From contig NC_043021.1 of assembly GCF_006345805.1 (NCBI RefSeq), positions 4,774,001-4,838,000 on the forward strand: a stretch of DNA of 64,000 bases. The letters are read 5' to 3'. The DNA comes from Octopus sinensis (lineage: Eukaryota). The notes below the pieces were generated by a model. It searched no databases. It was not told where the DNA came from and saw only the letters and a program-made list of their open reading frames with translations. Both the position numbers and the translations under genes were made by a program. The stretch's first letter is position 1. Every line of letters begins with the position of its first letter. Shown here piece after piece: positions 11,021-54,694 of this stretch.

Positions 11021-13172
11021 CATATATACGACAGGCTTCTTTCAGTTTCCGTCTACCAAATCCACTCACATGGTCGCAGTCAAATGACTGAAACAAGTAA
11101 AAGAGTAAAGAGTAAACTAGCACTATGACCCAGCAACGCCGGGTCATGGTGCTTGTGCATGCATATACAGCTGCATGCGTGCACACATACACGCGAGTAC
11201 TGTCCAAATCTCTGACCAACCACATACAGCTAGCTGGCATTCAATTGGTGTATCATGTTTCGGGAATTTTGATTGGATTTTGGATTAAAAATTCACAAAA
11301 AAGTCACTTCTATTGATTTTTTAATGGCTTTTAGGGGTGACTGGAGAAATGTAAAGATGTGCACGACCACCCTTGGACTGTTTTGAATGACCATAGAAAG
11401 TGCAAGCCTTCTAACTGAAAAATTGTGGATTTGTATAAAGGACACACACACAGACAGACATTTTGCCATTTATATATATTGAGAGATATATGTGTTGTTT
11501 GTTTTTTGTTATAGTGATATGACAGTTCAGCAACGGTCACAAGCTCAGAGGTTGCGTATAAAACTGAAGCAACAGAGTGCTGAGATGTACAGTTTGTGGT
11601 GTAATGAGCTTTATAAACTCTCCATTGCCAACCATGTAAGTTTTTTTTTAGCTATATTTGTCTTCTGTCTTACTTACTTGTCATTTGCTATTTCGTCTGT
11701 CGTTACGTTCTGAGTTCAAATTCCGCCAAGGTCGACTTTGCCTTTCACCCTTTCGGGGTCAATAAATAAAGTACCAGTTTCCCACTAGGGTCGATGTAAT
11801 CGACTTAATCCCTTTGTCTGTCCTTGTTTGTCCCCTCTATGCTTAGCCGCCGAGATTGACTTTGCCTTTCATCCTTTCAGGGTCGATAAATAAAGTACCA
11901 GTTTCGCACTGGGGTCGACGTAATCGACTTAATCCCTTTGTCTGTCCTTGTTTGTCCCCTCTATGTTTAGCCCCTTGTGGGTAATAAAGAAATAGAAATA
12001 GGTATTTCATCTGTCGTTACGTTCTGAGTTCAAATTCTGCCGAGGTCGACTTTGCCTTTCATCCTTTTGGGGTCGATAAATAAAGTACCAGTTTCCCACT
12101 AGGGTCGATGTAATCGACTTAATCCCTTCGTCTGTCCTTGTTTGTCCTCTCTATGTTTAGGCCCTTGTGAAGATACTGCTTCTATTTTATTTAATGGATT
12201 TTAAAAAATAAGGTCGTTTATGCCTTTTCAGTTCCGAGATGAAGTGTTCTGGTTTCCTCACAGTATTGACTTCCGAGGACGAACATATCCTTGCCCTCCT
12301 CATCTTAACCATTTAGGTAAGTACAGACTCCTCATTCTTATGCTTATACTCTATACCAAAGGTTCTCAGCCCATTTTGGCCAAAAGGATCTATTCCATCT
12401 CAGTCACAGATTTTTAAAAATTAATTCTTTTTAACTAAACAGTTTGAAACTTAGAAAACTGGTAGAATTTCTCATGTAGAACCTGATTTACTTACTCTTT
12501 CTCTATTACTCTTTTACTTGTTTCAGTCATTTGACTGCGGCCATGCTGGAGCACCGCCTTTAGTCGAGCAAATCGACCCCGGGACTTATTCTTTGTAAGC
12601 CCAGTACTTATTCTATCGGTCTCTTTTGGCGAACCGCTAAGTGACGGGGATGTAAACACACCAGCATCGGTTGTCAAGCAATGCTAGGGGGACAAACACA
12701 GACACACAAACACACCCACGCATACATATATATATATACATATATACGACAGGCTTCTTTCAGTTTCCGTCTACCAAATCCACTCACAAGGCATTGGTCG
12801 GCCCGGGGCTATAGCAGAAGACACTTGCCCAAGATGCCATGCAGTAGGACTGAACCCACAACCATGTGGTTGGTTAGCAAGCTACTTATCACACAGCCCA
12901 AAATTTTACATTTTAGAAATTGTTTTGCGTTAAAGTTGTTGTATTTGGGTGATTTCAACCAATTAACGATGTGTATTTGGTTGAAGAAAGCTTCTGCTGT
13001 TTGTGATAGGAATTGAAGAGGAACAACTTCTGGGTCGTCTCTGCTAAATGTCACCACTCTGTTTGAAGAATCAAACATATATATAATGTATATTACATTA
13101 TATATATGTTTATGTGGGCCGACCAAAGCCTTGTGAGTGGATTTGGTAGACGGAAACTGAAAGAAGCCCGTC

Positions 13173-16200: not shown

Positions 16201-19200
16201 AAAGCAGCAGAATACTGTAGTTAAACAAGTGATAGAGAGATCAGTGATAGAAAATGAAGATGTGGAGGGGCAATTTCATGGGAAAATTGAAGGGCTCAAC
16301 TGTACATATAGGCATTATGCTTCCAGAACATCGATCTCACAGGGATGAGCAGGTTTTCTCAAACACTAGTTGTCCTATCCTTTCACATCTCCACTATAAG
16401 ATTCGAACTTCTGAGATCTGCCTTCACCACTTTGTCCCATGTCTTCTTGGGTCTCCCTCTTCTTTATACAGCTGTTCTCATCCTTACACATCACAAGACT
16501 ATACCAGTGCAGTCTTCCCTCTTGCTCACAACATCTGATTCCTCTTATGCCCAATTCTTCTCTCAACACATTTACACTTTGTCATTCATGCACACTGACA
16601 TTGCACATCCATCAGATCATGCTCGCTTCATTTCTTTCAAGTATTTACATATCCTCTGCATTGAGGGCCCATGTCTCCCTACCATGTCGGTTTTCTGTCA
16701 GATTTTAGGATGAGTTATTCCAGTTGTTAACATAACTCTCTGTGATCGAATTTAGATGTGAGTGGCTGAGTTACAGGTAACATTTGACAGGCTTCCACAC
16801 AATTTCTATGCACCCACTTTCACTCATAAGGCTTAGGCCACCCAAGATGCCATGCCAGTGTGTGTGTGTGTGTGTTTACACAATAGCTGTGTTCATATAA
16901 AACTCTCCATCACTACACAACAGACATCACCAGGTGGTAAGCCACTGCATCATAGCCATTTCATCATCAGCAGCATTGTCCATGCTTGCATGGGTCAGAT
17001 GGAGTTAGTTGAGGTAGATTTTGTATGGCAGGATGCCCTTCCTGTCACTAATCCTCACCTGTTTCCAAGCAAGTCGACATTTCCCATGACTTGATTATGT
17101 TTTCCACAGAAGACTGGAAACACACAACATTGCTGGTATGATAGTGTAGTCATTTCTACAATCATCCCCAGTTGTTAACACAGGAGTACACATGCACACA
17201 AAGGGCTTCTTTCACTTTCTGTCTACCAAATCTACTCACAAGACTTCGCTTGACTTGGAGCTTTAATAGAAGACCCTTGGCCAAACTGCCATCCTATGGA
17301 ATTGAACTTGAGAACACATAGTCGAGAAGCCAGTGTCTTAACCACACCTCCCTGTCATCAATACAGTTAACCATTGACCTCCGCCTCTCTTTGCTTTATT
17401 TTCTTTAGGATGGATCCTGTAATGGTCTTCAACATTATGCTGCTCTTGGGCGTGACCAGGCTGGAGCTGAGTCAGTGAACCTCTGCCCATTCAACCATCC
17501 TAAAGATGTCTACAGTGATATTTGTGAGCTGGTAAGGATACAATAATAATATTGTTATTATTTTACCCCCACCTCCACTCCTACTCTTCCTTCTTATGTT
17601 GTTGCTCTACTGGTCTTAGGTTGAATCAGTAGAGTATTGGTCAAAATACCTTTAAGGCGGCGAGCTGGTAGAAACGTTAGCATGTCGGGCGAAATGCTTA
17701 GCGGTATTTCGTCTGCCGTTACGTTGTGAGTTCAAATTCCACCAAGGTTGACTTTGCCTTTCATCCTTTCGGGGTCGATAAATTAAGTACCAGTTACGCA
17801 CTGGAGTCGATGTAATCGACTTAATACCTATGTCTGTCCTTGTTTGTCCCCTCTATGTTTAGCCCCTTGTGGGTAATAAAGAAATAGGTATTTCGTCTGT
17901 CTTCATGTTCTGAGTTCAAATGCCGCCGGGGTCGACTTTGCCTTTCATCCTTTCGGGGTCGATAAATTAAGTACCAGTTAGTTATGCTCTGGGGGTCGAT
18001 GTAATCAACTTAATCCCTTTGTCCTTGTTTGTCCCCTCTATGTTTAGCCCCTTGTGGGTAATAAAGAAATAGGTATTTCGTCTGTCTTCATGTTCTGAGT
18101 TCAAATGCCGCCGGGGTCGACTTTGCCTTTCATCCTTTCGGGGTCGATAAATTAAGTACCAGTTACGCACTGGAGTCGATGTAATCGACTTAATACCTAT
18201 GTCTGTCCTTGTTTGTCCCCTCTATGTTTAGCCCCTTGTGGGTAATAAAGAAATAAGTATTTCTTCCAACTGTTTAGGTTCTGAGTTTTTTTTTTGCCTT
18301 TCATCTTTTTGGAGGTTGCTGAAGTTGTGTTTGTTTGTTTGTCCATGGACAAGATATCCCAAGAACCCCTGGATGAATTCAGGTGAAACTTTCAGGGATG
18401 TTTGGCCTTGTGACTAACACAGTCTCATTAGACTTTGGGATTGAACTGGTACCGGATTGAACAAGGGTTCTGGATTATTTTTCTAATTCTTTTTACTTTA
18501 CATATATATGTAAATTTTCACATAGTTCTCTTGTTATTATTTTTATTATTAGTTATAGTAGTACTAATATTATTGTTGTTCTTTTGTTTGTGTTCCACAG
18601 GTGGAGAAGGAGCGTCAGAAAGATGCTGAAAATGATATTGCGGTGGCCCAAAAGCTGGAAGGATTTGTGAAGAGGAAAGTAAGTTCTCCTCATTGCTGAA
18701 GTTGAGATAGAATGGCCAAGTGGGCAGAGGGGTTGGATGTTCAAGTCAACTAATATAATTCTATTGTTTCTGGGGGAAAATATTTTATCCTAATCCTACA
18801 TTACATCAGTTCATCTACCTGTGTGATACAGGTACCAACAGATCATTACAGACCTGGTGGTCTACACTGGAAGAAATTTTTTCTCGTTACAGTATCTTAT
18901 AGAGAGAAGATGTAATTCTTTATTACCTCAGGTCATTTAGCCATGAGAGTGAGGTAGAAGGTACACCAGATCATATATGGGAAAGTTATCTATGAGACGC
19001 TCGGTTCAAAGTCTCTCTTGACCAGAAATGGCCTGAACTCTTTGCGTGAACACCCTCCCTGTACATAACTCCATGTTCCCCTACATGGCCTTGCTTTTGC
19101 TTTTTGAGCCAAAAAATTAACTTGATGTCTTATTTATTTGGGATAGGCTTTTCATTTCTCATCACAATGTTTTGTAATGATGTACAAGAACTGCTCTGCC

Positions 19201-25200: not shown

Positions 25201-27860
25201 TGTGTAGGTATTGCTGACTTGTAGAGCTTTGTTGAGCAACTGTTGACGCATGTAGGATGGATCCGGTTATCAGCCAAGTCCATCATGTGGATTGTCCTGC
25301 AGCCTTCTTTTGACTGGGAAGGGAAAACAGTTTTCCTCTGTCTGGTGGCTCTGGCAAAAGTGGTAGTGTGGTGGATGAGGTTGAAAGGACTGAAGACAAA
25401 TTCTTTCCTCTTCAACCAAGCTCTCATCGACTTTTCCAAGTTCCACTTGAAGAGGAAAGTGAGTATAGAGGGGGAAAGTGCTACTCCCCAGTATTTTGGT
25501 GAAAGATGGGTAAACGTGGCAAGGTTAGCTCGTGAATGGGCCTACTCTGAACATGTGGTTTTAAGCCTGAAAAGTTAGTTAGTTAGTTAATTTTTTGGCT
25601 CAAAAAGCAAAAAGCAAGGCCATGTAGGGGGACATGGAGTTATGTACAGGGTGGTGTTCATGTAAAGAGTTCAGGCCACTTGTGGTCAAGGGAGACTTTG
25701 AACCGAGTGGTCAGGAGGAGTGAGGTGCCCTTAGTAGTTGGTGTGTCCAGGATGTGGTGGTGAGAGGTCCTTGGCTGGCCCTGGGGGGGAGAGTTTTATT
25801 GTTAAATTTTTGTTAAATTTTTGTTGTTAATTGTTATTTTACTTTATATGTGAATATTGTGCTGAGCCCCATTTGTCCTTTTTTGTTTTGTGTTTGGCCC
25901 CTATGACCAATAAAGAAAAGATTATTATTGTATTATTATCATTTATTTATTTTGTTTTCAGGTCAGGAATAACATATGTATCTGTTCATGATTGTTTTTG
26001 GACTCATGCATCAAGTGTTGAAATAATGAATCAGGTAAAGTAACTGTGTTTCTGTATGTGCCACTTTGACACTTATTAATTTATTTACTAAACTGATAAT
26101 TACAATAATACACATACATTTAACATATTATTCTTTACATATAAGATATAAAATATAGTAATGTATAAGGATACCAGTAATTACACAAGTACCTCGTTTT
26201 CATCTACCTATTACTTCAGTCCACTTGAGTAATAAAGGTAGGATGAGGTATTTTTATCTATTGGCTGAAACAGCTGTAAGTTATTTTCCCAATTTATATT
26301 CATGTTTGTTATTTTATAATAATTACTGGTATATATATATATATGTGACCACGTGTGTACCGTTGGCGATTCTTTTTCCTCCGTCTTCCCTTCTCCTATG
26401 TTTCCGACGAAGAGCTCCGCTCGAAACGTTAAACCCTCCTTCTTTCCTGAGCATCCAATAATACTATATTTGTTCCATGTCCTCGCGTTGTTGTGTTTTT
26501 TTTGTGCTTTCTTGTTTGGATTAACTTTATATATATATATATATATTTGTGTATGTGTAGATATGCCGTGAACAGTTTGTAGCACTGCACAATGAACCAA
26601 TTCTAGAAGACCTCTCAAAACATCTCATTGACACCTACTGTTCCAATGTAAGGTAAGTGCAGATATTTATTACGTTTTAAATTATACCTGGAAATATTCT
26701 GCACATATAAACTCATTTAAGTATGAGGAGCATAGCAAATCTGTCTCCTTGGCCAACCACATGCACCCTCTAATAAATAGGGCACTCTTGTGTAAGTATG
26801 CATGATATATAAAAAGCATTGTGGTGAAATAGATAGTTTATGGACTGCTAGAAACAGGAGCCAATATACCACAACTTCACCACTGCCATTCCATTTTCAG
26901 AAAATAAGTGCACAGTTATCTGCAGAATAGTCATATTAATTGAAATGACATAAAAAACCTGTATGAATTGTTAATAGTTCTTATGTTCTGGGTTCAAATC
27001 TTTCTGAGGTTAAGATTGACATGTCCCTAATATCAATTTTATCTTCTTACAGGAAACAACAGATCCGTCAAGAAGACTTTAATCATCTGCTTTCCATTTT
27101 CAGTAACGTCCCTCACAAAGGTCAGTAGGATTTCGTTGTTTTTATTATTTGTAGTTCTTGCTTTGAATTCATCATCATCATCATTCATCGTTTAGCGTCC
27201 GCTTTCCATGCTGGCATGGGTTGGATGGTTCAACTGGGGTCTAGGAAGCCAGAAGGCTGCACCAGGCCCAGTCTGATCTGGCAGTGTTTCTACAGCCGGA
27301 TGCCCTTCCTACGCCAACCACCCCATGAGTGTAGTGGGTGTTTTTTACGTGCCACCAGCACAGGTGCCAGACGAGGCTGGCAAACGGCCATGATCGGATG
27401 GTGCTTTTTAGAATAAAAATGCCTTGCAGTATTTATTTTGGTTTCTACTTTCTCAGTTCAAATTAACCCATGGTCAAATTTACCTTTTCGTCCTTTCAAG
27501 GTCAGTAAAATGAAGTACCAGTCAAATAATGGGGGTCAATGTAATCGACTAGCCACATCCCTTTGTGCCTAGATTATAAATTATTAAAGGGCAGACAGAA
27601 TTTCTTGTGGTAGTTGTTCTAGTTCTTTACATTCTGAGTTCAGGTCCCACTGAGGTCAGCTTTGCTTTTCACCCTTCCAGGGTCAATAAAATAAAGTACC
27701 ACTGGGAACTGGGTGGAGAGTTCAAATTTATAAACTTTACCTCTCCCCCAAGTTTTGCCCTTGGATCTATGGAGCAAAATATTTTTTAGTATTTTGTTAC
27801 TTTTCTTTGCATTCTAAGATCAACTTTGCCCTTTCATCTCTTCATATATATCTGCATGTT

Positions 27861-27912
<52 letters not shown>

Positions 27913-29797
27913 CATCATCACCCAAACTTGCATGTGTCACAAGAGAGTATGTTGAACAACAAGCAACTTGAACATAAATGAATAGCACAGGCGCAGGAGT
28001 GGCTGTGTGGTAATTAGCTTGCTTACCAACCACATGTTTCCGGGTTCAGTCCCACTGCGTGGCACCTTGGGCAAATGTCTTCTACTATAGCCTCGGGCCA
28101 ACCAAAGCCTTGTGAGTGGATTTGGTAGACGGAAACTGAAAGAAGCCCGTCGTATATATGTGTATATGTATGTGCATGTATGTTTGTGTGTCTGTGTTTG
28201 TCCCCCTAGCATTGCTTGACAACTGATGCTGGTGTTTTTATGTCCCTGTAACTTAGCGGTTCAGCAAAAGAGACCGATAGAATAAGTACTGGGCTTACAA
28301 AAGAATAAGTCCCGGGGTCGAGTTACTCGATTAAAGGCGGTGCTCCAGCATGGCCACAGTCAAATGACTGAAACAAGTAAAAGAGTAAAAGAGTAAGAGT
28401 ATAGTGTGTGTGTCAGTAAGGTGAGGGTTGGCAACGAGTACACCGAAGAATTCAGGGTAGAGGTAGGAGTCCACCAAGGTTCAGTCCTCAGCCCCCTCCT
28501 ATTTATCATAGTCCTCCAGGCAATAATGGAGGAATTCAAGACAGGATGCCCCTGGGAGCTCCTCTATGCTGATGACCTTGCTCTAATTGCTGAGTCACTA
28601 TCAGAACTAGAGGAGAAGTTTCACGTGTGGAAACAAGGATTAGAATCGAAGGGCCTTAGAGTCAACCTAGCTAAAACCAAAGTCCTCATAAGTAGGAAGG
28701 TAGGCAAACCACAAATCCCTTCAGGTAGATGGCCCTGCACGATCTGTAGTAGAGGCATAGGTAGAAACTCTATAAGATGTACCCAGTGTAAGCTATGGAC
28801 ACATAAGAGGTGCAGTAATATCAAAGGATGGCTAACTGGGAAGATACACACACACACACCTGTTCAATATAGAACAGAGCACTAATTTTGAAGTAGTGAT
28901 ATAAAAGTAGAAGCTAAGTAATTAGTATGGATTATTGTCCTTTTCATTTGCATCAATGCCTAGAACTTTCTACCCACAAAATAAATAGGGCAACGGTATC
29001 CACACAAATTTTCTTTCATGCACTGATTCAAGTTTTGTTAGGCAATTGCAATTAACAATTATACAGGTTAAGATATTTTCACATAAGTTGTAAATGGGAA
29101 CAATGAACTAAAAGTATATGGATAAATGAATAGCAAATGAATAAATAAGGTAGGCTAAAACAAGGTAAAATTAGATGAAATGGAGCACAGGAAATATTTA
29201 TCCTTCATTCATAACACTCTCCACCTACATTTTACATTGATCACCTTTCTGTGTTATCAAATTATTTCTCCTTCATCATCACCACACATCTGTCACTCTC
29301 CTCATACATTATACCTACCTCTCCCTTTCACAGTCTTGCGACCTGTCCAACTACATGTCATCTCTTTATCCTCCTCCTCCTCCTCTTATCTACTGTATCA
29401 TGATTACTATTCTACTTCCCTTCATATTTTCTGTAATTTTAGTAATCTCCCACTCCTCTCTACTCATATGTATCATTGATCCTCTTCACTTATCCACCAT
29501 TCACTACATCCACCCTTCAACTTCATCCAATCTCTAAACATTTGATTCTCTTCCGTTTCTTCCATTGGTGCACGATTCTTCATTGTACACCTCTTTGTTG
29601 TCTATTTATTATATATTTCTATACTTTTTTACTTGTCTAATTCCATGCATTGCTTGTCTTCTCTTTGCCTCATAAATTTACTCATGCTGTTTGCATGCCT
29701 TTTACCTGTCCTTACACCTGTGCTGAATCAACCATACTTTGTTAATCTGCTTTGTGAATTGACTATAACATCTATGTATACACGCACACACACACAA

Positions 29798-29834
<37 letters not shown>

Positions 29835-30257
29835 CACTTTATTCTACCACTGGTATTTGAGTACTCTTTTTTCCACCTTGTTTCACATTTATGCGTTTAC
29901 TCCGGTATATATATATATATATATACATATACATACATATATATACATTCGAAATGTGACTGCGTGTGTATCGTTGCCGATTTTTTTTTCCCTCTGTCTT
30001 CCCTTCTCTGGATCTTTCCTTCTCCTATGTTTCCGACAAAGAGCTCCGCTCGAAACGTTAAACCCTCCTTCTTTCCTTCCTTCCTGAGCGTCCAATAATA
30101 CTTTATTTGTTCCACGTCCTCGCGTTGTTGTGTTTTTTTTTGTGCTTTCATGTTTGGATTAACTTTATATATATATATATATACAGTTGGTTTTGTTTCT
30201 TTTTCAGGAGAATTCCAACTTGAGAAAATTCTGCAATCTACTTATTTCTTCAGCTGA
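640..30257 (+). CDS. POLRMT: Mitochondrial DNA-directed RNA polymerase, 3' part of gene (20 coding exons in window; 5' exons lie upstream of the window)
   Basis: Manual splicing gives an open 671-aa frame with DFRGRTYP, motif [11 protein letters not shown], motif [25 protein letters not shown], motif C VHDCFW and terminal STYFFS*. All introns are GT-AG with matching phases. Confidence 0.97.
782..1222. mobile_element. hAT-like MITE containing a nested TTAA MITE
   Basis: Ends cagtggttcttaac / ggttgagaacctctg; no clear TSD. Confidence 0.55.
913..1141. mobile_element. piggyBac-like MITE (TTAA-CCCT ... AGGG-TTAA)
   Basis: TTAA flanks and short TIRs. Other copies: 2523-2751, 3171-3532 (with family C insert), 36729-36955, 39504-39732 (inserted at TTAA of an RTE ORF), 46957-47381 (inverted pair). 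Confidence 0.82.
1486..1779 (+). mobile_element. Short 3'-end copy (family C) of the RTE LINE, (GAT)n tail
   Basis: Matches the 3' UTR at 55530-55990. About 20 further copies, e.g. 3369-3520, 5209-5448, 6700-6951, 9686-9990, 14020-14232(-), 20648-20990(-), 21556-22450, 23060-23235, 27170-27405(-), 32256-32645, 37976-38229, 38759-39085(-), 45850-46092, 53222-53605(-). Confidence 0.85.
2945..3021 (+). CDS. POLRMT: POLRMT window exon 2 ([25 protein letters not shown])
   Basis: ctttcag acceptor, gtatgt donor, phase 0/2. Confidence 0.88.
3706..3897 (-). mobile_element. CR1-like LINE extreme 3' end
   Basis: Minus-strand [30 protein letters not shown]; other copies at ~18985-19115(+) and 25570-25712(-). 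Confidence 0.72.
4021..4090 (+). CDS. POLRMT: POLRMT window exon 3 ([24 protein letters not shown])
   Basis: ttttccag acceptor, gtttgt donor, phase 2/0. Confidence 0.88.
4725..5208. repeat. Tandem repeat, three ~161-bp C-rich units
   Basis: Unit starts at about 4725, 4886 and 5048. Confidence 0.92.
5485..5852 (-). mobile_element. Non-autonomous Helitron-like element
   Basis: Minus strand begins TC and ends with a GC hairpin (gcactatgaccc..gggtcatagtgc) plus CTAG; second copy at 11117-11484. Confidence 0.75.
7100..8205 (+). repeat. Tandem array of six ~174-bp SINE-B body units behind one head
   Basis: Unit starts at about 7157, 7331, 7506, 7681, 7855 and 8028. Confidence 0.93.
8226..8361 (+). 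CDS. POLRMT: POLRMT window exon 4 (PHPKTMKIF...[11 protein letters not shown]...LLAT)
   Basis: cattcag acceptor, gtgagt donor, phase 0/1; PMLxPPxPW motif. Confidence 0.95.
8682..8990 (-). mobile_element. RTE-1/BovB-like LINE 3' end with (GATA)n tail
   Basis: Open frame [10 protein letters not shown]...SLEKDIMLG...[11 protein letters not shown]...DRTDWR. Confidence 0.85.
9362..9501 (+). CDS. POLRMT: POLRMT window exon 5 (TKLVRL...[17 protein letters not shown])
   Basis: ttccacag acceptor, gtaagt donor, phase 1/0. Confidence 0.95.
10111..10211 (+). CDS. POLRMT: POLRMT window exon 6 ([33 protein letters not shown])
   Basis: tacttcag acceptor, gtaaat donor, phase 0/2. Confidence 0.93.
10377..10686 (+). 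mobile_element. 3' end of a second RTE-clade LINE family
   Basis: [11 protein letters not shown]...DREVWR then (TGA)n; other copies at ~24895-25090(-) and 42455-42790(-). Confidence 0.82.
11515..11635 (+). CDS. POLRMT: POLRMT window exon 7 (SDMTVQQ...[18 protein letters not shown])
   Basis: ttgttatag acceptor, gtaagt donor, phase 2/0. Confidence 0.95.
11689..12170 (+). repeat. SINE-B body tandem, about 3 units (first truncated)
   Basis: Repeated gtcgactttgcctttcatcc...ccccttgtg units. Confidence 0.88.
12232..12316 (+). CDS. POLRMT: POLRMT window exon 8 ([28 protein letters not shown])
   Basis: ttttcag acceptor, gtaagt donor, phase 0/1; DFRGRxYP motif. Confidence 0.97.
14395..14506 (+). CDS. 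POLRMT: POLRMT window exon 9 ([37 protein letters not shown])
   Basis: gttccag acceptor, gtaagg donor, phase 1/2. Confidence 0.97.
14852..14930 (+). CDS. POLRMT: POLRMT window exon 10 ([27 protein letters not shown])
   Basis: tgtgttag acceptor, gtaaat donor, phase 2/0. Confidence 0.95.
15367..15489 (+). CDS. POLRMT: POLRMT window exon 11 ([18 protein letters not shown]...HLPVHQ)
   Basis: ctgtcag acceptor, gtatag donor, phase 0/0. Confidence 0.97.
15883..16113 (+). mobile_element. tRNA-derived SINE family B, full monomer
   Basis: Head ggcggcgagctggcagaaacg, B-box agttcaaattcc, 15-bp TSD atatattgaagtggt (15868-15882 / 16114-16128). Other monomers: ~19337-19525(+), 19870-20089(-), 34603-34832(-), 35631-35864(-, TSD tatacattacc). 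Confidence 0.88.
17409..17531 (+). CDS. POLRMT: POLRMT window exon 12, catalytic motif A ([16 protein letters not shown]...DVYSDICEL)
   Basis: ttctttag acceptor, gtaagg donor, phase 0/0. Confidence 0.98.
17655..18255 (+). repeat. SINE-B head plus three bodies
   Basis: Junction aagaaatag|gtatttcgtctg at about 17888 and 18071. Confidence 0.88.
18601..18678 (+). CDS. POLRMT: POLRMT window exon 13 ([26 protein letters not shown])
   Basis: ttccacag acceptor, gtaagt donor, phase 0/0. Confidence 0.95.
20350..20538 (+). CDS. POLRMT: POLRMT window exon 14, O-helix motif B ([17 protein letters not shown]...[10 protein letters not shown])
   Basis: tacacag acceptor (weak pyrimidine tract), gtgaga donor, phase 0/0. 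Confidence 0.96.
21285..21442 (+). CDS. POLRMT: POLRMT window exon 15 ([10 protein letters not shown]...[13 protein letters not shown]...STF)
   Basis: cttccag acceptor, gtgagg donor, phase 0/2. Confidence 0.95.
23445..23543 (+). CDS. POLRMT: POLRMT window exon 16 ([33 protein letters not shown])
   Basis: ttttccag acceptor, gttggt donor, phase 2/2. Confidence 0.97.
23890..24365 (-). mobile_element. CR1/L2-like LINE 3' remnant
   Basis: [15 protein letters not shown]...IICVMWKI. Confidence 0.7.
24390..24730 (+). mobile_element. Possible Helentron/HINE-like non-autonomous element
   Basis: Terminal hairpin aacctcc...ggcggaggt of the type seen in such elements. Confidence 0.4.
25962..26034 (+). 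CDS. POLRMT: POLRMT window exon 17, catalytic motif C ([25 protein letters not shown])
   Basis: ttttcag acceptor, gtaaag donor, phase 2/0. Confidence 0.97.
26345..26526 (+). mobile_element. Penelope-like pseudo-LTR fragment (family D) with hammerhead-like motif, in (TA)n
   Basis: Motif at 26400-26434. Other copies: 29950-30164, 45436-45640, split copy 53605-53672 + 53907-54035. Confidence 0.65.
26561..26652 (+). CDS. POLRMT: POLRMT window exon 18 ([30 protein letters not shown])
   Basis: tatgtgtag acceptor, gtaagt donor, phase 0/2. Confidence 0.95.
27053..27120 (+). CDS. POLRMT: POLRMT window exon 19 ([23 protein letters not shown])
   Basis: cttacag acceptor, gtcagt donor, phase 2/1. Confidence 0.88.
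28405..28846 (+). mobile_element. Internal RTE RT fragment
   Basis: ORF 28406-28885: [29 protein letters not shown]. Confidence 0.9.
30208..30257 (+). CDS. POLRMT: POLRMT last coding exon ([16 protein letters not shown])
   Basis: ttttcag acceptor, phase 1, conserved C-terminal STYFFS then TGA. Confidence 0.97.
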
Positions 30258-41369: not shown

Positions 41370-42450
41370 AACCTTGTTGTTGCCCCTCTTTATCCCAGTT
41401 TCAATGATTCTGCACTGGTCTGCTATTCATTCCTGCTTAGCTTCCTGCATTTTCTTCTTAGCCTTCCTTATTCATAGCTCAACATTGCTGACTTTCCCTC
41501 CTGACACGTTAGTTTGGTCTTTCTCGGGTCTCATTTCAAATCACGTTGATCCAAGATGTCATCAGTGACCCATGCTTTCTTTTTCCTTCTTCTCCCAAAC
41601 ACCTCTAGAGCCATTTCCTGAAGTACTTCTTTGATATTGTTGATTAGGGAGTTTATATCATCTTAAAAGGTGGCGAGCTGGCAGAAACGTTAGCAAGCCG
41701 GGCGAAATGCGTGGCCGTATTTCGTCTGCTGTTACGTTCTGGGTTCAAATTCCGCCGAGGTCGACTTTGCCTTTCATCCTTTCGGGGTCGATAAATTAAG
41801 TACCAGTTATGCACTGGGGTTGATGTAATCGACTTAATCCGTTTGTCTGTCCTTATGTGTCCTCTCTGTATTTAGCCCCTTGTGGGTAATAAAGAAATAG
41901 GTATTTCATCTGCCGCTATGTTCTGGGTTCAAATTCCGCCGAGGTCGACTTTGCCTTTCATCCTTTCGGGGTCGATAAATTAAGTACCAGTTATGCACTG
42001 GGGTCGATGTAATCGACTTAATCCGTTTATCTGTCCTTATGTGTCCCCTCTGTGTTTAGCCCCTTGTGGGTAGTAAAGAAATATATATTATCTTCCAGAA
42101 GGTTAAGGACCATAAACCTGCTGCCCACTTCCACCTCAAGCACCTCTACAACCCTGGGATATTTCAGTTTTTCTACATCAAACCTAATATATATGTGGCC
42201 CTTTTCTTATGGATACTTTTTAGTTTGAGCCTCATTGTCATGGTGACCAAATAAGGATCAGTGTTGGTCTGTGCACCAGGGAAAGTCCTAGTCCTAGCCT
42301 TGTTGATGCTGAACTTGAGGTACAAGGATGAAGTCACTTTGGTAGTGAGTCTTGCTGTTGGGTGAATACACCATGTTGTTCTGCACGAGGTCTTGTGTAG
42401 AAACTGTGTGTTGGCTAGGGTCCGCTTGTGAGTCCTAGCAAATTTTAAGA
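41370..42450 (-). mobile_element. Degenerate RTE-type LINE endonuclease/linker remnants split by SINE-B
   Basis: Minus-strand translation resembles LANT..HK...SINKARTRTFPG and KKKAWVTDDILD. Confidence 0.65.
41668..42082 (+). repeat. SINE-B head plus two bodies
   Basis: Junction aagaaatag|gtatttcatctg at about 41900. Confidence 0.85.
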
Positions 42451-44584: not shown

Positions 44585-44992
44585 GTTAGCCACTACACAC
44601 ATTTTTTTCTGTACCCTTGTTTTTTCTGTGTCCCTTTCTGTAGAAGAGCATAGGCTCGAAACGTAAAAGACTGTCTATTCCTGAGCATTATACTTATACA
44701 TCTGTTTGTTTTGTACACCACCTGTCTTCGTCTTTTGTTTTTTTCGTAAACTCTCCCTATGTTGATTCACTAGCTTCTGCACGCATATTTTTTTCTCTCC
44801 TTCTTTCTGTGTTTTTTTCTCTGTGTATCTTTCTGTTGAAGAGCGTAGGCTCGAAACGTTAAAGACTTGTTTTATTTATATTTCCTGAGCGCCATACTAA
44901 TACAATTGTTTGTTTGTATTCCACCTGCCTTCGTCTTTTGTTTATTTCCGTAAACCTGCCTTCGTCTTTTGTCTATTTTCATAAAGCTTCCC
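44585..44992 (+). mobile_element. Tandem pair of related Penelope-like units (family D') each with a hammerhead-like motif
   Basis: gagc-NNNN-gctc-gaaacgt at 44646-44664 and 44841-44859; degenerate relative at ~54500-54650. Confidence 0.6.
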
Positions 44993-44993
44993 G

Positions 44994-45027
<34 letters not shown>

Positions 45028-45414: not shown

Positions 45415-45507
45415 GTATGTATGTATGTATATATATGTGACCGCGTGCATATTGTTGGCGATTTTCTTTCTCCGTCTTCCCTTCCTTGGACTTTTCCTTT
45501 TTTCTAT

Positions 45508-45542
45508 ATTTCTGATGAAGAGCTCCGCTCGAAACATCAAAT
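45508..45542 (+). ncRNA. Minimal type I hammerhead ribozyme-like motif
   Basis: attt-CTGATGA-a-GAGC tcc GCTC-GAAAC-ATC-aaat: canonical CUGAUGA/GAAA core with stems I and II; activity untested. Confidence 0.55.
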
Positions 45543-47615
45543 CCTCCTTCTTTCTTTCCTTTCCTGAGCGTCCAATAACACTATACTTGTTCCACATTCT
45601 CGTGTTGTTGTGTTTTCTCTTTATTCATGTTTGGAGTAACTATATATATATATATATATATAAGTTCAACAAAATTTAGATAAAATGAAGTAGCACGAAA
45701 CGATTGTACTACACTACCTTGGATATCCTTGTTGCTTATTTTGATTATATACTCTTTTACTCTTTCACTTGTTTCTGTCATTTGACTGCGGCCATGCTGG
45801 AGCACCGCCTTTATATATATATATATATATTATATATATATACATATTACGATGGCACATAAAAAGCACCATCCGTTCGTGGTCCTTTGCCAGCTCTGTC
45901 TGGCACCTGTGCGGGTGACATGTAAAAAGCACCCACTACACTCACGGAGTGGTTGGCGTTAAGAAGGGCATCCAGCCGTAGAAACACTGCCAGATTTGAC
46001 TGGGCCTGATGAAGCCTTCTGGCTTCACAGACCCCAGTAGAACCGTCCAACCCATGCTAGCATGGAAAGCGGACGCTAAACGATGATGATGATATATATA
46101 CATATGTACTATATATTTGTTGCATATTTATATTATTTGTATCTATTTTTTTTTTTTTTGTCCTACTGAAGAGTAAGAATAGAAAGCAAGCAGACAGAAA
46201 AAGAGAAATAGCTTCACGGCTGCTGGGTTTGGGGAAAGGCATAGTTGTGCAAGGATGCGAGGAGGAGTAAAGATTGACAAGAATAAGCACAAGAGAGGGA
46301 GGGACGAGAAAGTGAGTTAAAGGAGAGAAAATTTCACACACATACACACTAACCACACTATCATATATATATACCTCCTAAATGTATATATACATACAGG
46401 CATATATTTATACTCTTTTTTTTTTTTTTTTTACTTGTTTCAGTCAATTTGACTGCGGCCATGCTGGAGCACCGCCTTTAATCGAGCAAATCGACCCCGG
46501 GGACTTATTCTTCGTAAGCCCAGTACTTATTCTATCGGTCTCTTTTGCCGAACCGCTAAGTAACAGGGACATAAATACACCAGCATCGGTTATCAAGCAA
46601 TGCTAGGGGGACAAACACAGACACACAAACACACACACATACACACATACATATACATATATACGACAGGCTTCTTTCAGTTTCCGTCTACCAAATCCAC
46701 TCACAAGGCATTGGTCGGCCCGGGGCTATAGCAGAAGACACTTGCCCAAGGTGCCATGCAGTGGGACTGAATCCGGAACCATGTGGCTGGTAAGCAAGCT
46801 ACTTACCACACAGCCACTCCTGCTTTCTATTTTATTTTAAAATACCTCAATGGCAAAAGTACATACTATCATGACCTCATGCAGTTGTCAAATAGTAATT
46901 TATGTCATTATAGTATCAACTAGTCAATCCTGTTACTGCTTTGACCCTCTCAGCACTTTAGCATTTAAACTGGCAATTTCAGACTGAAATATTCTACCTG
47001 TTTTATGTTTAAACTGGCCAGATGTGGCTTCTCATGCCAGCCCTGCACTATCATTTGGCAAAAACTCAAAGCTACGAGATAATACATGATAAATTCAAAG
47101 CAATGTGAATAAATAAGCATTACATTTGACTGAGTAATCTGAATGCTAAAGGATTAACCCTTTAGTGTTCAGATTATTCAATCAAACATAATGCCTGTTG
47201 ATTCCCATTGATTTGAATTAATCATGCATTATCTCATATCTTCAAGATCTTGATGGTGTAATTACCTAATGTAGAATAACATTGTAGGGTAGGTGTGAGA
47301 GCCTGGATCTGGTCAGTTTGAACATAAAACAGATTAGCTATTTTGGCCAGATATGGCCGGTTTAAATACTAAAAGGGTTAAAGACCAACATTTTCATGGA
47401 GAATATAAGGTATATAATGCTTTCAAAAAAGGCAAATCTGATATATTCATGTGTGTTTTTATTTGGTGGCGGGGAGTTGAGGTGAGGATTATTACCTGAG
47501 TGGAAGAACCAGTTGAAGACAGTTTGAAAGGTTTTGGAAGGGTGATTTCAGCTTAAAATAGAAAAATCATGAGTCTTCTTCGGGATAAAAATTTTTAAGG
47601 GATTCTGTTGGTAAT

Positions 47616-50790: not shown

Positions 50791-50819
50791 GTAAGCCCAC
50801 TTCATAATCCTTCTGCTTC

Positions 50820-50821
50820 CA

Positions 50822-50853
<32 letters not shown>

Positions 50854-51824
50854 TGTGTTTAGGTGTGTATGTGTGTGTGTGTGTTTGGGTGTGTGTCTGT
50901 GTGTGTGTGTATGTTTGAGTGTGTGTATGTATGTCTGTGTGTATGTATGTGTGTGTGTATGTATGTGTGTGTATGTATGTATGTATGTGTGTGTGTATGT
51001 ATGTGTGTATGTATGTATGTATGTGTGTATGTGTGTGTATGTATGTATTTATGTATGTATGTATGTATGTGTGTGTGTGTGTCTGTGTATGTATGTATGT
51101 GTGTGTGTGTATGTATATGTGTGTGTGTCTGTGTGTGTATGTATGTATGTATATGTGTGTGTGTGTATGTGTGTGTGTCTGTGTGTGTATGTATGTATGT
51201 ATATGTGTGTGTGTGTATGTGTGTGTGTGTGTGTGGTAAACGAAGGCCGTGTGACTAAGAAGTTCGCTGCGCAATCCCGAGGTCCTGGGCTCGATACTAT
51301 TGCGTATCATCTGCCAGTGGCTTCTATCAAGAGCATCAGGTCGACGCAAGGTGGTCTGTAAGCTTTAATTCGAAGGCCCAATCCCTTTGTCTTTATACCC
51401 TGTATATATCATATGGATTCTACCTGTCAATTATGTGGAACACTCGGCCACTTACACTTTAGATTTAAACAAGGAGATAGTTCAGTCGATCGATACACAC
51501 AATACATACAGATATATATTGTCATTCGTATTTATAATATATGTTTATGTCACATGTATATATAATACATTATCTAGTATGTGTTGTGTGAGTACGTCTA
51601 TTAATTGAATTGTAATATACCTGTTACGTACATCTGTTGGTATGGCATGTGTATGTGTATGTATGTGAATATATATATATGTATATATCTATTATGTATA
51701 TCTACAATATATATATATATACAATATATGGTATGTATATTGTCTATATACAATATATGGTATTTCTGTTGTGTATATATTATACTGTATGTATCATATA
51801 AATGGATATCTATCTATCTATCTA

Positions 51825-51895
<71 letters not shown>

Positions 51896-52034
51896 GTCTG
51901 TCTGTCTGTCTCATACATGTACACATAACATATTCATATACATCTTACTAAATACATCACCATGCATCATATTGCTCATAGAAAGTATATAATTATATAT
52001 TCATTGTGTGTGTGTATATATATATATATGTATG

Positions 52035-52086
<52 letters not shown>

Positions 52087-52544
52087 ATATATGTATGTAT
52101 CATCGTTTAACGTCCGTTCCCCATGCTAGCATGGGTTGGACCAAATATATATAAATATATGTATGCATATATATATATAAATATAGGTATGTATATATAT
52201 ATAAATATAGGTATGTATATATATATACATATATGTATGTATATATATAAATAAATATATGTATGTATATATATATATATATGTATGTATATATATATAT
52301 ATATATGTATATGTATATATATATATGTATGATTATGTATGTATATATATATATATGTATGATTATATATATATGTATATATATATGTATGATTATATAT
52401 GTATATATATATATGCATATATATATATATATATGTATATATATATGTATATATATATGTGTGTATATATATGTGTGTATATATATGTATGTATATATAT
52501 ATATGTATGTTATATGTGTGTATATATATATGTATATATATATA

Positions 52545-52601
<57 letters not shown>

Positions 52602-53220: not shown

Positions 53221-53846
53221 TATCATCATCATCATTTAATGTCTGCTTTCCATGCTAGCATGGGTTGGATGATTTCATTGAGGACTGGTGAACCAGATGG
53301 CTGCACCAGGCTCCAATCTCGATCTGGCAAAGTTCCTACAGCTGGATGCCCTTCCTAACGCCAACCACTCCAAGAGTGTAGTGGGTGCTTTTATGTGCCA
53401 CCGGCACGAGTGCCAGTCAGGTGGTACTGGCAATGGCCACGACAAAATCGTGTTTTCTTTTTCTTTACGTGTCACCTGCACACCGGCACAAGTTCCAGTA
53501 AGGTGACGCTGGTAACGATCACGCTCGAATGGTGCTTTTTGCATGTCACTGGCACGAACCACAGTTAGCCACTCTGGCAACAATCACGCTTGGATGGTGC
53601 TATGACCGTGTGTGTATCATTGGCGATTTTTTTTCCTCCGTCTTCCCTTCCTTGGACTTTTCCTTTTTTCTAATCTTGGAGTGGTTGGCGTTAGGAAGGG
53701 CATCCAGCTGTAGAAACTTTGCCAGATCAAGATTGGCGGTTGGTGCAGCCATCTGGTTCACCAGTCCTCAGTGAAATCATCCAACCCATGCTAGCATGGA
53801 AAGCGGATGTTAAACAATGATGATGATAAATATATATATATACACT

Positions 53847-53910
<64 letters not shown>

Positions 53911-54031
53911 GGGCTCCGCTCGAAACATTAAATCCTCCTACTTTTTACCCTTTCCTGAGCGTCCAATAACACTATACTTGTTCCACGTCCTCGCGTTGTT
54001 GTATTTTCTCTTTGTGTTTTCATGTTTGGAT

Positions 54032-54085
<54 letters not shown>

Positions 54086-54173: not shown

Positions 54174-54694
54174 TATATGTAGATCAAAGTACTGGTGAGG
54201 ATATAAACCTCAGAGGGATAAAAATATCAAAAATTATACTTCTTGAATACCTATAGGCATATTCATATATATATATATATATATTAATATTATTAAAAAC
54301 CAAGAGAGAAAATAGAATAGATTAATACAAGTTTATTATTAATAAACTTTTATTAATCTTGTTTCCATATTCTCTCTGGATTTTTAGTTTTATATATATA
54401 TATGTATATACATATATATGTACGCACACACACACACACACACATATATACATACATACACACACATATATATATATATTTATTACTCACTCCAAAAGTT
54501 TCTTTTATTCTCTGTGTGTTTATTTCCTTTCTATTGAAGAGTGTTCACTTGAAATGTAAGACTTTCTCACCTTCCCAAGTGTCAAACTAATACACCTACA
54601 TGCTGTTTATACACCTGACTTTGTCTTTTGTTTTTCTGTAAATTTCAACTATATATATAGACATATGCATATCTATCTATCTATCTATCTATCT

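What the first reader, a model, noticed from the sequence alone, without database searches (positions are those of the whole stretch)
26400..30063. Penelope-type hammerhead-like motifs in sense orientation just upstream of two POLRMT splice acceptors
Seen: gttt-CCGACGA-a-GAGC tcc GCTC-GAAAC-GTT-aaac at 26400-26434, and a copy at 30029-30063 whose core reads CCGACAA. Predicted cut sites are 130 and 148 nt before the acceptors at 26560 and 30207. Known: Penelope-like elements carry minimal type I hammerheads whose palindromic ACGU stem III supports cleavage as dimers. Inference: the two direct repeats bracket exons 18-19 of an essential gene; pairing could cut the pre-mRNA near the branch point or release a two-exon fragment. 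Caveat: both cores deviate (U4C; G8A in the second), so they may be dead or selected to be weak.
Basis: partly seen in the sequence, partly recalled or inferred. Interest (0 to 1): 0.72.

Follow-up and report, generated by a model that had tools for sequence, protein, structure and literature searches.

The report
Decayed hammerhead-like motifs in octopus repeats
The two motifs are real and do look like the minimal hammerhead ribozymes of Penelope-like retroelements, but they are mutated copies of a common short repeat that landed in (TA)n tracts of two POLRMT introns, and nothing suggests they cut the gene's RNA.

Summary
Both 35-nt motifs, their core deviations (U4C; U4C plus G8A) and the 130 and 148 nt distances to the acceptors are as described. 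The motifs are not specific to POLRMT. They lie inside a ~190-215 bp interspersed repeat (c-family, 4 copies) with a sister family (m-family, 3 copies, one a head-to-tail dimer). That makes seven modules in 64 kb, all on the + strand, each followed by (TA)n.

The resemblance to a hammerhead is beyond chance. A minimal-hammerhead descriptor allowing one core mismatch finds 3 hits against 0.01 expected. Helix I covaries (G-C, A-U, C-G) and helix II has one compensatory change. The bulged A after A9, the G10.1-C11.1 pair, the palindromic ACGU and H17 (never G) are all present. Taking the m-family as outgroup, the c-family ancestor is a perfect minimal hammerhead (CUGAUGA).

The best reading is relics of a (TA)n-targeting, Penelope-type non-autonomous retroelement in an octopus genome. 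The POLRMT copies carry core mutations, a weak 4-bp helix I and no helix III of their own, so appreciable self-cleavage is unlikely. No Penelope ORF link could be tested. This is a new member of a known kind, of low to moderate interest.

The parts
26346..26530 (+). c-family repeat copy c1 (~185 bp) in the 526-nt POLRMT intron 26035-26560. (TA)n lies on both sides.
   Evidence: nhmmer E=6e-57
26400..26434 (+). Hammerhead-like module of c1: helix I GTTT/AAAC, core CCGACGA (U4C), bulged A, helix II GAGC-TCC-GCTC, GAAA, palindrome ACGT, H17=T. The predicted cut is after 26430.
   Evidence: 65.7 bits
29956..30167 (+). [quoted passage not shown] It is followed by (TA)n and the acceptor at 30207.
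30029..30063 (+). Hammerhead-like module of c2: core CCGACAA (U4C plus G8A, the latter a CpG-to-CpA change private to this copy).
45437..45645 (+). c-family copy c3. Its module at 45508-45542 has the canonical core CTGATGA and helix I ATTT/AAAT, but 15.2-16.2 reads CA, so the palindrome is lost.
53602..53672 (+). 5' part of c-family copy c4. The copy was split by a later SINE insertion (53673 to about 53830) and (TA)n expansion inside the hammerhead core.
53908..54040 (+). 3' part of c4. The module remnant reads ..TGA A GGGC TCC GCTC GAAA CA T T AAAT.
   Evidence: 34.4 bits
44596..44791 (+). m-family unit m5, the first unit of a head-to-tail dimer. Its module at 44634-44669 reads CTTT CTGTAGA A GAGC ATAG GCTC GAAA CG T A AAAG (A6U).
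44792..44990 (+). m-family unit m6, the second unit, followed by (TA)15 at 44995-45024. Its module at 44829-44864 reads CTTT CTGTTGA A GAGC GTAG GCTC GAAA CG T T AAAG (A6U).
54490..54660 (+). Old, CpG-depleted m-family copy m7. Its module at 54527-54563 reads CTATTGA..GAGT GTTC ACTT GAAATGTA, and (TA)n lies on both sides.
   Evidence: (21.2 bits)
25962..26034 (+). POLRMT exon (..[24 protein letters not shown]), donor CAG|GTAAAG.
26561..26652 (+). POLRMT exon ([30 protein letters not shown]..), donor AAG|GTAAGT at 26652/26653 (alternative donor at 26647).
30208..30257 (+). Last POLRMT coding exon (..[16 protein letters not shown] stop).

Best explanation
The two motifs are decayed minimal type I hammerhead modules of the kind found in Penelope-like elements. 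Each lies inside a copy of a short (~190-215 bp) non-autonomous retroelement (the 'c-family') of an octopus genome.

The element inserts into or next to (TA)n microsatellites, most likely mobilised in trans by the reverse transcriptase and GIY-YIG endonuclease of a Penelope-like element (inferred). Two copies of one subfamily landed independently in (TA)n tracts of two neighbouring POLRMT introns. Their master copy already carried U4C.

In the founder element the module was a canonical minimal hammerhead: GUUU-CUGAUGA-A-GAGC/GCUC-GAAA-ACGU-U. It has no helix III of its own and can become active only by pairing its ACGU palindrome with a second copy. In today's POLRMT copies the core is mutated (U4C; U4C plus G8A) and helix I is only 4 weak pairs. 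They are therefore expected to be inert or nearly inert passengers that are removed with the introns.

Shown: the repeat family, the motif architecture, the covariation, the (TA)n flanks and the core mutations.
Inferred: mobilisation by a Penelope-like element, the ancestral sequence, and the lack of activity.
For: (1) Repeat nature. There are 4 c-family copies with a common 5' end (G/A)TGACC and a common 3' end ...GGATTAACT(T)TA. There are also 3 copies of a sister m-family.

(2) Flanks differ between c1 and c2, so they are independent insertions. They share CCGAC, so U4C was already in their source copy.

(3) Hammerhead architecture beyond chance: 3 descriptor hits against 0.01 expected. No other hit appears on either strand.

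(4) Structure. Helix I plus helix II are paired in 98% of cells. There are three pair types at the outer helix I pair and a C-G to U-A change in helix II. Only 2 of 500 shuffles reach this level. A rival extended hairpin is paired in only 73% of its extra helix.

(5) Variation falls on the free positions (N7, H17 = U/C/A and never G, loop II). A9, the bulged A, G10.1, G12-A14, A15.1 and U16.1 are invariant.

(6) Polarity. T at position 4 in c3, m5, m6 and m7 makes U4 ancestral and U4C derived. CA in c2 against TG in c3 and c4 at positions 7-8 points to a CpG or TpG ancestor with G8.

(7) All six independent insertions are followed by (TA)n and four of them are also preceded by it. (TA)n is the stated preferred target of Neptune- and Naiad-type Penelope-like elements (PMC8557442).

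(8) A head-to-tail dimer (m5/m6) is typical of Penelope-like element insertions (PMC8557442).

(9) The same module with a canonical CUGACGA core occurs in an unrelated eukaryote-like metagenome contig, as two inverted 5'-truncated copies (L003). The only two hits in 596 Gb of prokaryotic contigs lack CUGA.

(10) Activity. G8 or C3 single changes abolish a Penelope-like element hammerhead, and catalytic mutants still transpose in vitro (PMC11167929). U4C considerably lowers activity (PMC3088659). Intact minimal hammerhead dimers are already poor cleavers (PMC4209133). The helix I pairing probability is 0.02-0.08.
Against: - No Penelope-like RT or GIY-YIG ORF was found next to any copy or among the ten longest ORFs of the window, and no more octopus sequence could be sampled. 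The Penelope-like element link therefore rests on resemblance and target preference only.
- No Rfam hammerhead model matches, even at E<=10. The models also miss c3 and the L003 module, which have canonical cores, so this is uninformative rather than negative.
- Helix II has 4 bp, whereas published Penelope-like element minimal hammerheads usually have 6-8 bp.
- All three m-family copies carry A6U, so that family's founder may never have been active.
- Only seven related sequences support the covariation.
- U4C is tolerated in vivo in a viroid (PMC3088659), so weak activity of c1 cannot be excluded.
Confidence: 0.68

Rival explanations
1. The two sense-oriented motifs pair through their ACGU palindromes into a double hammerhead that cleaves POLRMT pre-mRNA about 130-150 nt upstream of the acceptors. 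This would attenuate expression or release a two-exon fragment.
For: Both copies keep the ACGU palindrome, the GAAA box and helices I and II. In a dimer, c1's active site carries only U4C, a change tolerated in vivo in a viroid (PMC3088659). Both copies are in the sense orientation and close to acceptors. All seven modules in the window are on the + strand.
Against: - Core mutations in both copies; G8A is expected to kill the c2 site (PMC11167929).
- Intact minimal hammerhead dimers cleave only weakly, and mostly at non-physiological Mg2+ (PMC4209133).
- The helix III partner lies 3.6 kb away and offers only 4 bp (about -3.5 to -5.5 kcal/mol).
- Helix I is rarely formed in context.
- The copies are ordinary members of a dispersed repeat family.
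- Efficient cleavage of an essential gene's pre-mRNA would be selected against.
Confidence: 0.04
2. Chance or convergent resemblance. The module is only a conserved hairpin of an ordinary SINE (for example a protein-recognition stem-loop or promoter element) that happens to look like a hammerhead, and it never was one.
For: None of the seven modules combines a canonical core with the palindrome. All m-family copies have A6U. Rfam models give nothing. The hammerhead fold is not the minimum free energy fold of any module. About 90 nt downstream of the module (TTCCTGAGCG...) is conserved too, so conservation is not restricted to the hammerhead. At about 0.01 chance hits per 64 kb, a genome of several Gb holds hundreds of chance one-mismatch hits.
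Against: - The inferred ancestor is a perfect minimal hammerhead.
- Features not imposed by my descriptor are present: G10.1-C11.1, H17 varying among U/C/A only, and helix I covariation with three pair types.
- The identical module has a canonical core in an unrelated organism.
- The (TA)n association and tandem arrangement match Penelope-like element biology (PMC8557442).
Confidence: 0.17
3. The elements are non-LTR retrozymes. These are tandem hammerhead-bearing repeats that are transcribed, self-cleaved and ligated into small circular RNAs. The dispersed c copies would then be monomeric insertions of such circles.
For: The unit size (185-215 nt) and low GC (0.32-0.43) fit the 170-400 nt, under 45% GC range (PMC7229834). 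m5/m6 is a head-to-tail dimer with modules 195 nt apart. Animal retrozymes are proposed to be non-autonomous derivatives of Penelope-like element terminal repeats (bioRxiv 10.64898/2026.07.22.740005).
Against: - Retrozymes carry canonical type I hammerheads with a real helix III and loop 1-loop 2 contacts, and they occur as multimers (PMC7229834). Here helix III is absent and five of the six insertions are monomers.
- The four c copies share a fixed linear 5' end that does not coincide with the cleavage site.
- Vertebrate retrozymes are depleted from introns (same preprint).
Confidence: 0.08
4. The insertions were co-opted as splicing elements (a pyrimidine-rich tract or branch point donor) for the two acceptors, and the hammerhead-like part is irrelevant.
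For: Both intronic copies end 30-40 nt upstream of an acceptor. Their 3' halves are T-rich and contain TTAAC about 45-50 nt from the AG.
Against: The acceptor-proximal polypyrimidine stretches (tttgtgtatgtgtag; ttggttttgtttctttttcag) lie outside the repeat, beyond the (TA)n. The first intron is only 526 nt long, so proximity there is expected. Nothing could be tested.
Confidence: 0.03

Closest known systems
Minimal hammerhead ribozymes (min-HHR) in the pseudo-LTRs of Penelope-like elements (Cervera & De la Pena 2014, PMC4209133)
   Same: Type I topology. Short helix I (4 bp). An unpaired nucleotide between A9 and 10.1. A G10.1-C11.1 pair. No helix III of its own, with a palindromic 15.2-16.2 (ACGU) that can pair only with a second copy. 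Dispersed mostly as single motifs, with sequence variation within a genome. (TA)n target association and tandem or inverted arrangements as in Penelope-like elements (PMC8557442).
   Different: Helix II has 4 bp, against 6-8 bp in most published min-HHRs. No RT/GIY-YIG ORF link was shown. The copies start at a fixed 5' end, like a SINE rather than a 5'-truncated Penelope-like element. Every copy in this window has at least one defect (U4C, G8A, A6U or a lost palindrome).
Non-LTR retrozymes of metazoans (Cervera & De la Pena 2020, PMC7229834)
   Same: Short (~200 nt), AT-rich, non-coding units with a type I hammerhead-like motif. One head-to-tail dimer is present.
   Different: No canonical helix III or loop-loop contacts. 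Mostly monomers. Circular RNA was not tested.
Conserved intronic hammerheads of amniotes (HH9/HH10; De la Pena & Garcia-Robles 2010, cited in PMC7229834)
   Same: A hammerhead motif in sense orientation inside an intron of a protein-coding gene.
   Different: Those are single-copy, ultraconserved, canonical and active ribozymes. These are mutated copies of a dispersed repeat. No Rfam HH9/HH10 match was found.
Sm-alpha-type SINE-like hammerhead repeats of Schistosoma (Ferbeyre et al. 1998, cited in PMC4209133)
   Same: A short SINE-like retroposon that carries a type I hammerhead.
   Different: Sm-alpha has a canonical, active hammerhead with helix III. No sequence similarity was tested or expected.

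Membership tests
Hammerhead ribozyme (type I, minimal variant) | Catalytic core C3-U4-G5-A6-N7-G8-A9 ... G12-A13-A14 | tested here: not met
   c1 reads CCGACGA (U4C) and c2 reads CCGACAA (U4C, G8A). Of the seven modules only c3 has the canonical CTGATGA. m5, m6 and m7 have A6U. GAAA is intact in all. The inferred c-family ancestor does meet the consensus.
Hammerhead ribozyme (type I, minimal variant) | Helices I and II flanking the core, supported by covariation | tested here: met
   98% of cells are paired. The outer helix I pair is G-C, A-U or C-G. Helix II has a C-G to U-A change in m7. Only 2 of 500 shuffles reach this level, and slid controls give 13-48%. The support comes from only 7 related sequences.
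Hammerhead ribozyme (type I, minimal variant) | A15.1-U16.1, a cleavage-site nucleotide H17 that is not G, and a palindromic 15.2-16.2 for dimeric helix III | tested here: met
   c1, c2, m5 and m6 read ACGU followed by U or A. c3 and c4 have ACAU, so the palindrome is lost. H17 is U, U, C, U, A, U, A.
Hammerhead ribozyme (type I, minimal variant) | Unpaired nucleotide between A9 and 10.1, and a G10.1-C11.1 pair (features listed in PMC4209133) | tested here: met
   The bulged A and G10.1 are invariant in all seven modules. The pair is G10.1-C11.1 in six and G-U in m7.
Hammerhead ribozyme (type I, minimal variant) | Match to curated covariance models (Rfam Hammerhead_1, _3, _II, HH9, HH10) | tested here: inconclusive
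   No hammerhead model matches at the gathering score or at E<=10. The models also miss the canonical-core modules c3 and L003, so they do not cover variants that lack helix III.
Hammerhead ribozyme (type I, minimal variant) | Site-specific self-cleavage giving 2',3'-cyclic phosphate and 5'-OH ends | not testable with these tools
   This needs in vitro transcription and cleavage assays, or RNA end mapping.
Penelope-like element (terminal pseudo-LTR or non-autonomous derivative) | Association with an ORF encoding a Penelope-type RT and a GIY-YIG endonuclease | tested here: not met
   No such ORF flanks any copy. The ten longest ORFs contain only two non-LTR RT+PHD fragments. A genome-wide test was not possible because no further octopus sequence could be retrieved.
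Penelope-like element (terminal pseudo-LTR or non-autonomous derivative) | Insertion bias for (TA)n microsatellites (Neptune and Naiad clades, PMC8557442) | tested here: met
   (TA)n follows the 3' end of all six independent insertions. It also precedes the 5' end of four of them (c1, c2, c3, m7).
Penelope-like element (terminal pseudo-LTR or non-autonomous derivative) | Partial tandem or inverted insertion structures; 30-40 bp 'tail' | tested here: inconclusive
   One head-to-tail dimer is present (m5/m6). There are no inverted pairs in the window. The tail was not examined for lack of a full-length reference.
Non-LTR retrozyme | Tandem multimers of 170-400 nt units, each with a canonical type I hammerhead; expressed as circular RNA | tested here: not met
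   The unit size fits, but there is only one dimer and five monomeric insertions. There is no helix III or loop-loop interaction. Circular RNA cannot be tested here.

The most novel reading that the evidence does not exclude
The U4C subfamily may retain weak, dimer-dependent activity. In that case the two sense copies, 3.6 kb apart in one POLRMT pre-mRNA, would form a double hammerhead that cuts a fraction of nascent transcripts upstream of the last exons. This would be a transposon-derived ribozyme attenuator of the mitochondrial RNA polymerase gene. The all-sense orientation of the seven modules in this window would then reflect some transcription-linked property of the family.
Probability: 0.04. 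Interest if true: 0.75.

Novelty: new member of a known kind. Interest (0 to 1): 0.27.

Why it matters
If the family assignment holds, this adds a cephalopod example of short non-autonomous elements that carry Penelope-type minimal hammerheads and target (TA)n. It also shows a subfamily that kept transposing with a U4C core, which fits the recent in vitro result that hammerhead cleavage is dispensable for Penelope-like element insertion (PMC11167929). For POLRMT the result is reassuringly ordinary: the motifs are intronic transposon debris. Rfam's hammerhead models gave no match even to the canonical-core modules lacking helix III (c3, L003), so descriptor-based or custom covariance models are needed to census them.

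Tried and rejected
- Rfam at gathering and at E<=10 on c1, c2, c3, m5/m6 and L003. No hammerhead hit appeared anywhere, including on the canonical-core modules, so I treat this as uninformative.
- Exact-pattern scans of public collections for more copies. The c-family-specific pattern found nothing in metagenomes. A relaxed module pattern gave one eukaryote-like metagenome contig (L003), none in viral contigs, and two bacterial chance matches without the CUGA box.
- Using translations of the repeat's open minus-strand frame as a protein query, to pull copies out of assembled read sets. Nothing scored.
- Looking for the orthologous POLRMT locus. The best relatives are 63-77% identical exon fragments from unrelated organisms. 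L001 is a compact genome without these introns.
- One 20.9-kb Octopus vulgaris locus (L002). It shares the window's other repeat families at 84-91% identity but has no c or m copy.
- tRNA-derived SINE head: rejected (ARAGORN found 0 genes; no tRNA hit in Rfam).
- MITE or Helitron: rejected by inspection, since there are no terminal inverted repeats and no TC...CTRR ends.
- LINE-dependent SINE: no similarity of c or m elements to anything else in the window, including the two RT-bearing LINE fragments.
- An extended-hairpin alternative fold that pairs the core with the ACGU region: weaker support than the hammerhead helices.
- Supplementary sequence files of the two key papers are not held.
- CpG-decay reasoning alone suggested that CCGACGA might be ancestral. 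Comparison with the m-family outgroup reversed this.
Full report

At 26400-26434 the + strand reads GTTT-CCGACGA-A-GAGC-TCC-GCTC-GAAA-CG-T-T-AAAC. At 30029-30063 it is the same, except that the core reads CCGACAA. In hammerhead numbering these differ from the consensus by U4C, and by U4C plus G8A.

The predicted scissile bonds (after 26430 and 30059) lie 130 and 148 nt upstream of the exon starts at 26561 and 30208.

- The first acceptor is supported by homology. The exon 25962-26034 ends ...[16 protein letters not shown]. The next exon begins [19 protein letters not shown], as in mitochondrial RNA polymerase fragments from other animals.
- The second acceptor precedes [16 protein letters not shown]-stop, the typical C-terminus.
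- The exon at 26561 most likely ends at the consensus donor AAG|GTAAGT (26652/26653). Its phase does not join that of the last exon, so one more small exon must lie between the two repeats. I did not find it, and I could not check the exon numbers.

Alignment and profile searches show four copies of a ~190-215 bp element, which I call the c-family:

| Copy | Coordinates | Note |
|---|---|---|
| c1 | 26346-26530 | intron 26035-26560 |
| c2 | 29956-30167 | before the last exon |
| c3 | 45437-45645 | canonical core |
| c4 | 53602-53672 plus 53908-54040 | split by a later SINE insertion, exactly in the hammerhead core |

All copies begin at the same (G/A)TGACC and end at ...GGATTAACT(T)TA followed by (TA)n.

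A sister m-family shares about 100 nt around the module. It is present as a head-to-tail dimer (m5 44596-44791, m6 44792-44990, modules 195 nt apart, followed by (TA)15). It is also present as an old CpG-free copy, m7 at 54490-54660.

A covariance model built from five modules finds exactly these seven sites in the window, all on the + strand, and nothing else convincing.

The flanks of c1 and c2 are unrelated, so they are independent insertions. c1 and c2 are each other's closest relatives (94% identity in aligned columns) and share CCGAC. The U4C change was therefore already present in their source copy. G8A is private to c2 and is a CpG-to-CpA change.

**Is the hammerhead resemblance more than chance?**

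I wrote a descriptor after the published minimal hammerhead. It requires a helix I of 4 bp, CUGANGA, an optional bulge, a helix II of 4-8 bp, GAAA, an optional palindrome, U, and H. Results:

| Core mismatches allowed | Hits in the window | Mean in 100 dinucleotide shuffles |
|---|---|---|
| up to 1 | 3 (c1, m5, m6) | 0.01 |
| up to 2 | 4 | 0.15 |

The copies share descent, so this amounts to roughly one or two independent events. A genome of several Gb would hold hundreds of such chance hits. The count alone is therefore not decisive, and the pattern of variation adds more:

- Helix I plus helix II are paired in 98% of cells.
- The outer helix I pair occurs as G-C (c1, c2), A-U (c3) and C-G (m5, m6).
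- Helix II shows a C-G to U-A change and two G-U wobbles.
- Only 2 of 500 column shuffles do as well, and slid controls drop to 13-48% paired.
- An alternative extended hairpin that pairs the core with the ACGU region is paired in only 73% of its extra helix.
- The variable positions are those the hammerhead consensus leaves free: N7 (C, C, U, U, A, U, U), H17 (U, U, C, U, A, U, A, never G), and loop II (UCC against AUAG or GUAG).
- A9, the extra A, G10.1, G12-A13-A14, A15.1 and U16.1 are invariant.

The features that Cervera and De la Pena list as not imposed by their descriptor are present (PMC4209133): a nucleotide between 9 and 10.1, a G10.1-C11.1 pair, and a palindromic 15.2-16.2.

**Polarity of the core changes**

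CpG decay alone would suggest that CCGACGA is ancestral. However, the m-family serves as an outgroup. Position 4 is T in c3, m5, m6 and m7, so U4 is ancestral and U4C is derived in the c1/c2 subfamily. At positions 7-8, c2 has CA while c3 and c4 have TG, which points to an ancestor with G8. At 15.2-16.2, CG in c1, c2, m5 and m6 is ancestral and CA in c3 and c4 is derived.

The inferred c-family founder is therefore GUUU-CUGAUGA-A-GAGC-UCC-GCUC-GAAA-CG-U-U-AAAC, a perfect minimal hammerhead. This is an inference from seven sequences.

**Evidence from outside the window**

The source genome is not in the searchable collections. Other repeat families of the window match Octopus vulgaris chromosome OX597814.1 at 84-91% identity, and an RT fragment matches an O. 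vulgaris protein at 77%. The host is therefore an octopod, probably genus Octopus.

A pattern covering only G8 to the start of helix I's 3' strand was scanned against three collections:

- In the JGI metagenomes it found one contig (L003). There the unconstrained upstream bases read CTGAC, giving a canonical CUGACGA core. A second copy lies head to head in inverted orientation, and both are truncated at the 5' side. That arrangement is described for Penelope-like element insertions (PMC8557442).
- In 596 Gb of prokaryotic contigs it found two matches, and neither has the CUGA box.
- In viral contigs it found none.

Rfam's hammerhead models match none of these sequences, not even c3 or L003 at E<=10. 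The Rfam negative therefore says nothing about helix-III-less variants.

**What kind of element is it?**

- There are no terminal inverted repeats, no tRNA-like head, and no similarity to the two LINE fragments of the window or to anything else in it.
- Every insertion is followed by (TA)n and four of six are also preceded by it. (TA)n is the stated preferred target of Neptune- and Naiad-type Penelope-like elements (PMC8557442).
- Together with the minimal hammerhead module and the tandem dimer, this makes a non-autonomous, Penelope-mobilised element the best guess. A recent preprint derives animal retrozymes from Penelope-like element terminal repeats (10.64898/2026.07.22.740005).
- The defining link, copies flanking a Penelope-type RT/GIY-YIG ORF, was not found in the window and could not be tested genome-wide.
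- Differences from published minimal hammerheads are a helix II of only 4 bp and a fixed, SINE-like 5' end.

**Do the POLRMT copies do anything?**

Nothing indicates that they do.

- The hammerhead fold is not the minimum free energy structure of any module. In a 200-nt context helix I has a pairing probability of 0.02-0.08, while the helix II hairpin is stable at 0.57-0.82.
- Helix III would have to form between two 4-nt palindromes 3.6 kb apart, worth about -3.5 to -5.5 kcal/mol.
- Bona fide minimal hammerheads show no cleavage as monomers and only weak cleavage as dimers, mostly at non-physiological Mg2+ (PMC4209133).
- Single C3 or G8 substitutions abolish a Penelope-like element hammerhead. 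Catalytic mutants still insert in vitro, and no RNA-seq reads end at the cleavage site (PMC11167929).
- U4C considerably lowers activity, although it is tolerated in a viroid in vivo (PMC3088659).

So c2's own site should be dead and c1's at best very weak. The fact that a U4C master still produced at least two insertions fits the view that cleavage is dispensable for transposition.

The closeness to the acceptors has simple explanations. The first intron is only 526 nt long. In both cases the element sits in a (TA)n tract, and the acceptor-proximal pyrimidine tracts lie outside the repeat.

**Verdict**

The classification as a Penelope-type hammerhead-like motif is reasonably supported, though the ORF link is missing. 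The functional inference is unsupported.

This is a new member of a known kind: transposon-borne minimal hammerhead relics, here in an octopus, sitting incidentally in two POLRMT introns. One small oddity remains. All six independent insertions in the window are on the same strand, while other repeat families are mixed. The two-sided probability is about 0.03.

Noticed in passing
window 26400-54563 (seven modules; see parts): All seven hammerhead-like modules (six independent insertions) are on the + strand. Other repeat families in the window are mixed, for example 11+/9-, 7+/10- and 9+/8-. The two-sided binomial p is about 0.03, and I have no explanation.
   Followed up: partly
window 53673-53907: A SINE of the abundant family ending ...CCAACCCATGCTAGCATGGAAAGCGGA(C/T)GTTAAAC(G/A)ATGATGAT, plus an expanded (TA)n, has inserted into copy c4 exactly at the TATA just upstream of its hammerhead core. 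This destroyed C3-A6.
   Followed up: partly
window 26653-30207: The reading phases of the POLRMT exon ending at 26652 (or 26647) and of the last exon starting at 30208 do not join. A small coding exon must lie in this 3.5-kb interval, and I did not locate it.
   Followed up: partly
window 7133-8330; also 11680-12170, 17696-18390, 41709-42216: Tandem arrays (period about 175-185 nt, up to about 7 units) of a SINE-like unit containing GAGTTCAAATTCCGCCGAGGTCGACTTTGCCTTTCATCC. ARAGORN calls no tRNA in them.
   Followed up: no
window 28397-28882 (+) and 56296-57267 (-): Two fragments of a non-LTR retrotransposon ORF (RVT_1 plus a PHD-like zinc finger). The protein is 77% identical to an Octopus vulgaris protein, and the DNA is about 85% identical to OX597814.1. 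This identifies the host as an octopod.
   Followed up: yes
window 50800-53250: A compound (TG/TA/TATG)n microsatellite region of about 2.4 kb. It creates long spurious ORFs in several frames.
   Followed up: no
L003 4391-4560 (JGI contig Ga0126337_10000459): Two inverted, 5'-truncated copies of an element meet head to head. Each carries a minimal-hammerhead-like module: CTGACGA-A-GAGC-TAAC-GCTC-GAAACGTC, and the twin reads ATGATGA-A-GGGC-... Rfam scores the region only as generic microRNA-like hairpins. The organism is unknown, and the sequence is AT-rich and ORF-free.
   Followed up: partly
window 44923-44985: A 31-nt internal tandem duplication (2 copies, 90% identical) in the 3' part of unit m6.
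   Followed up: no
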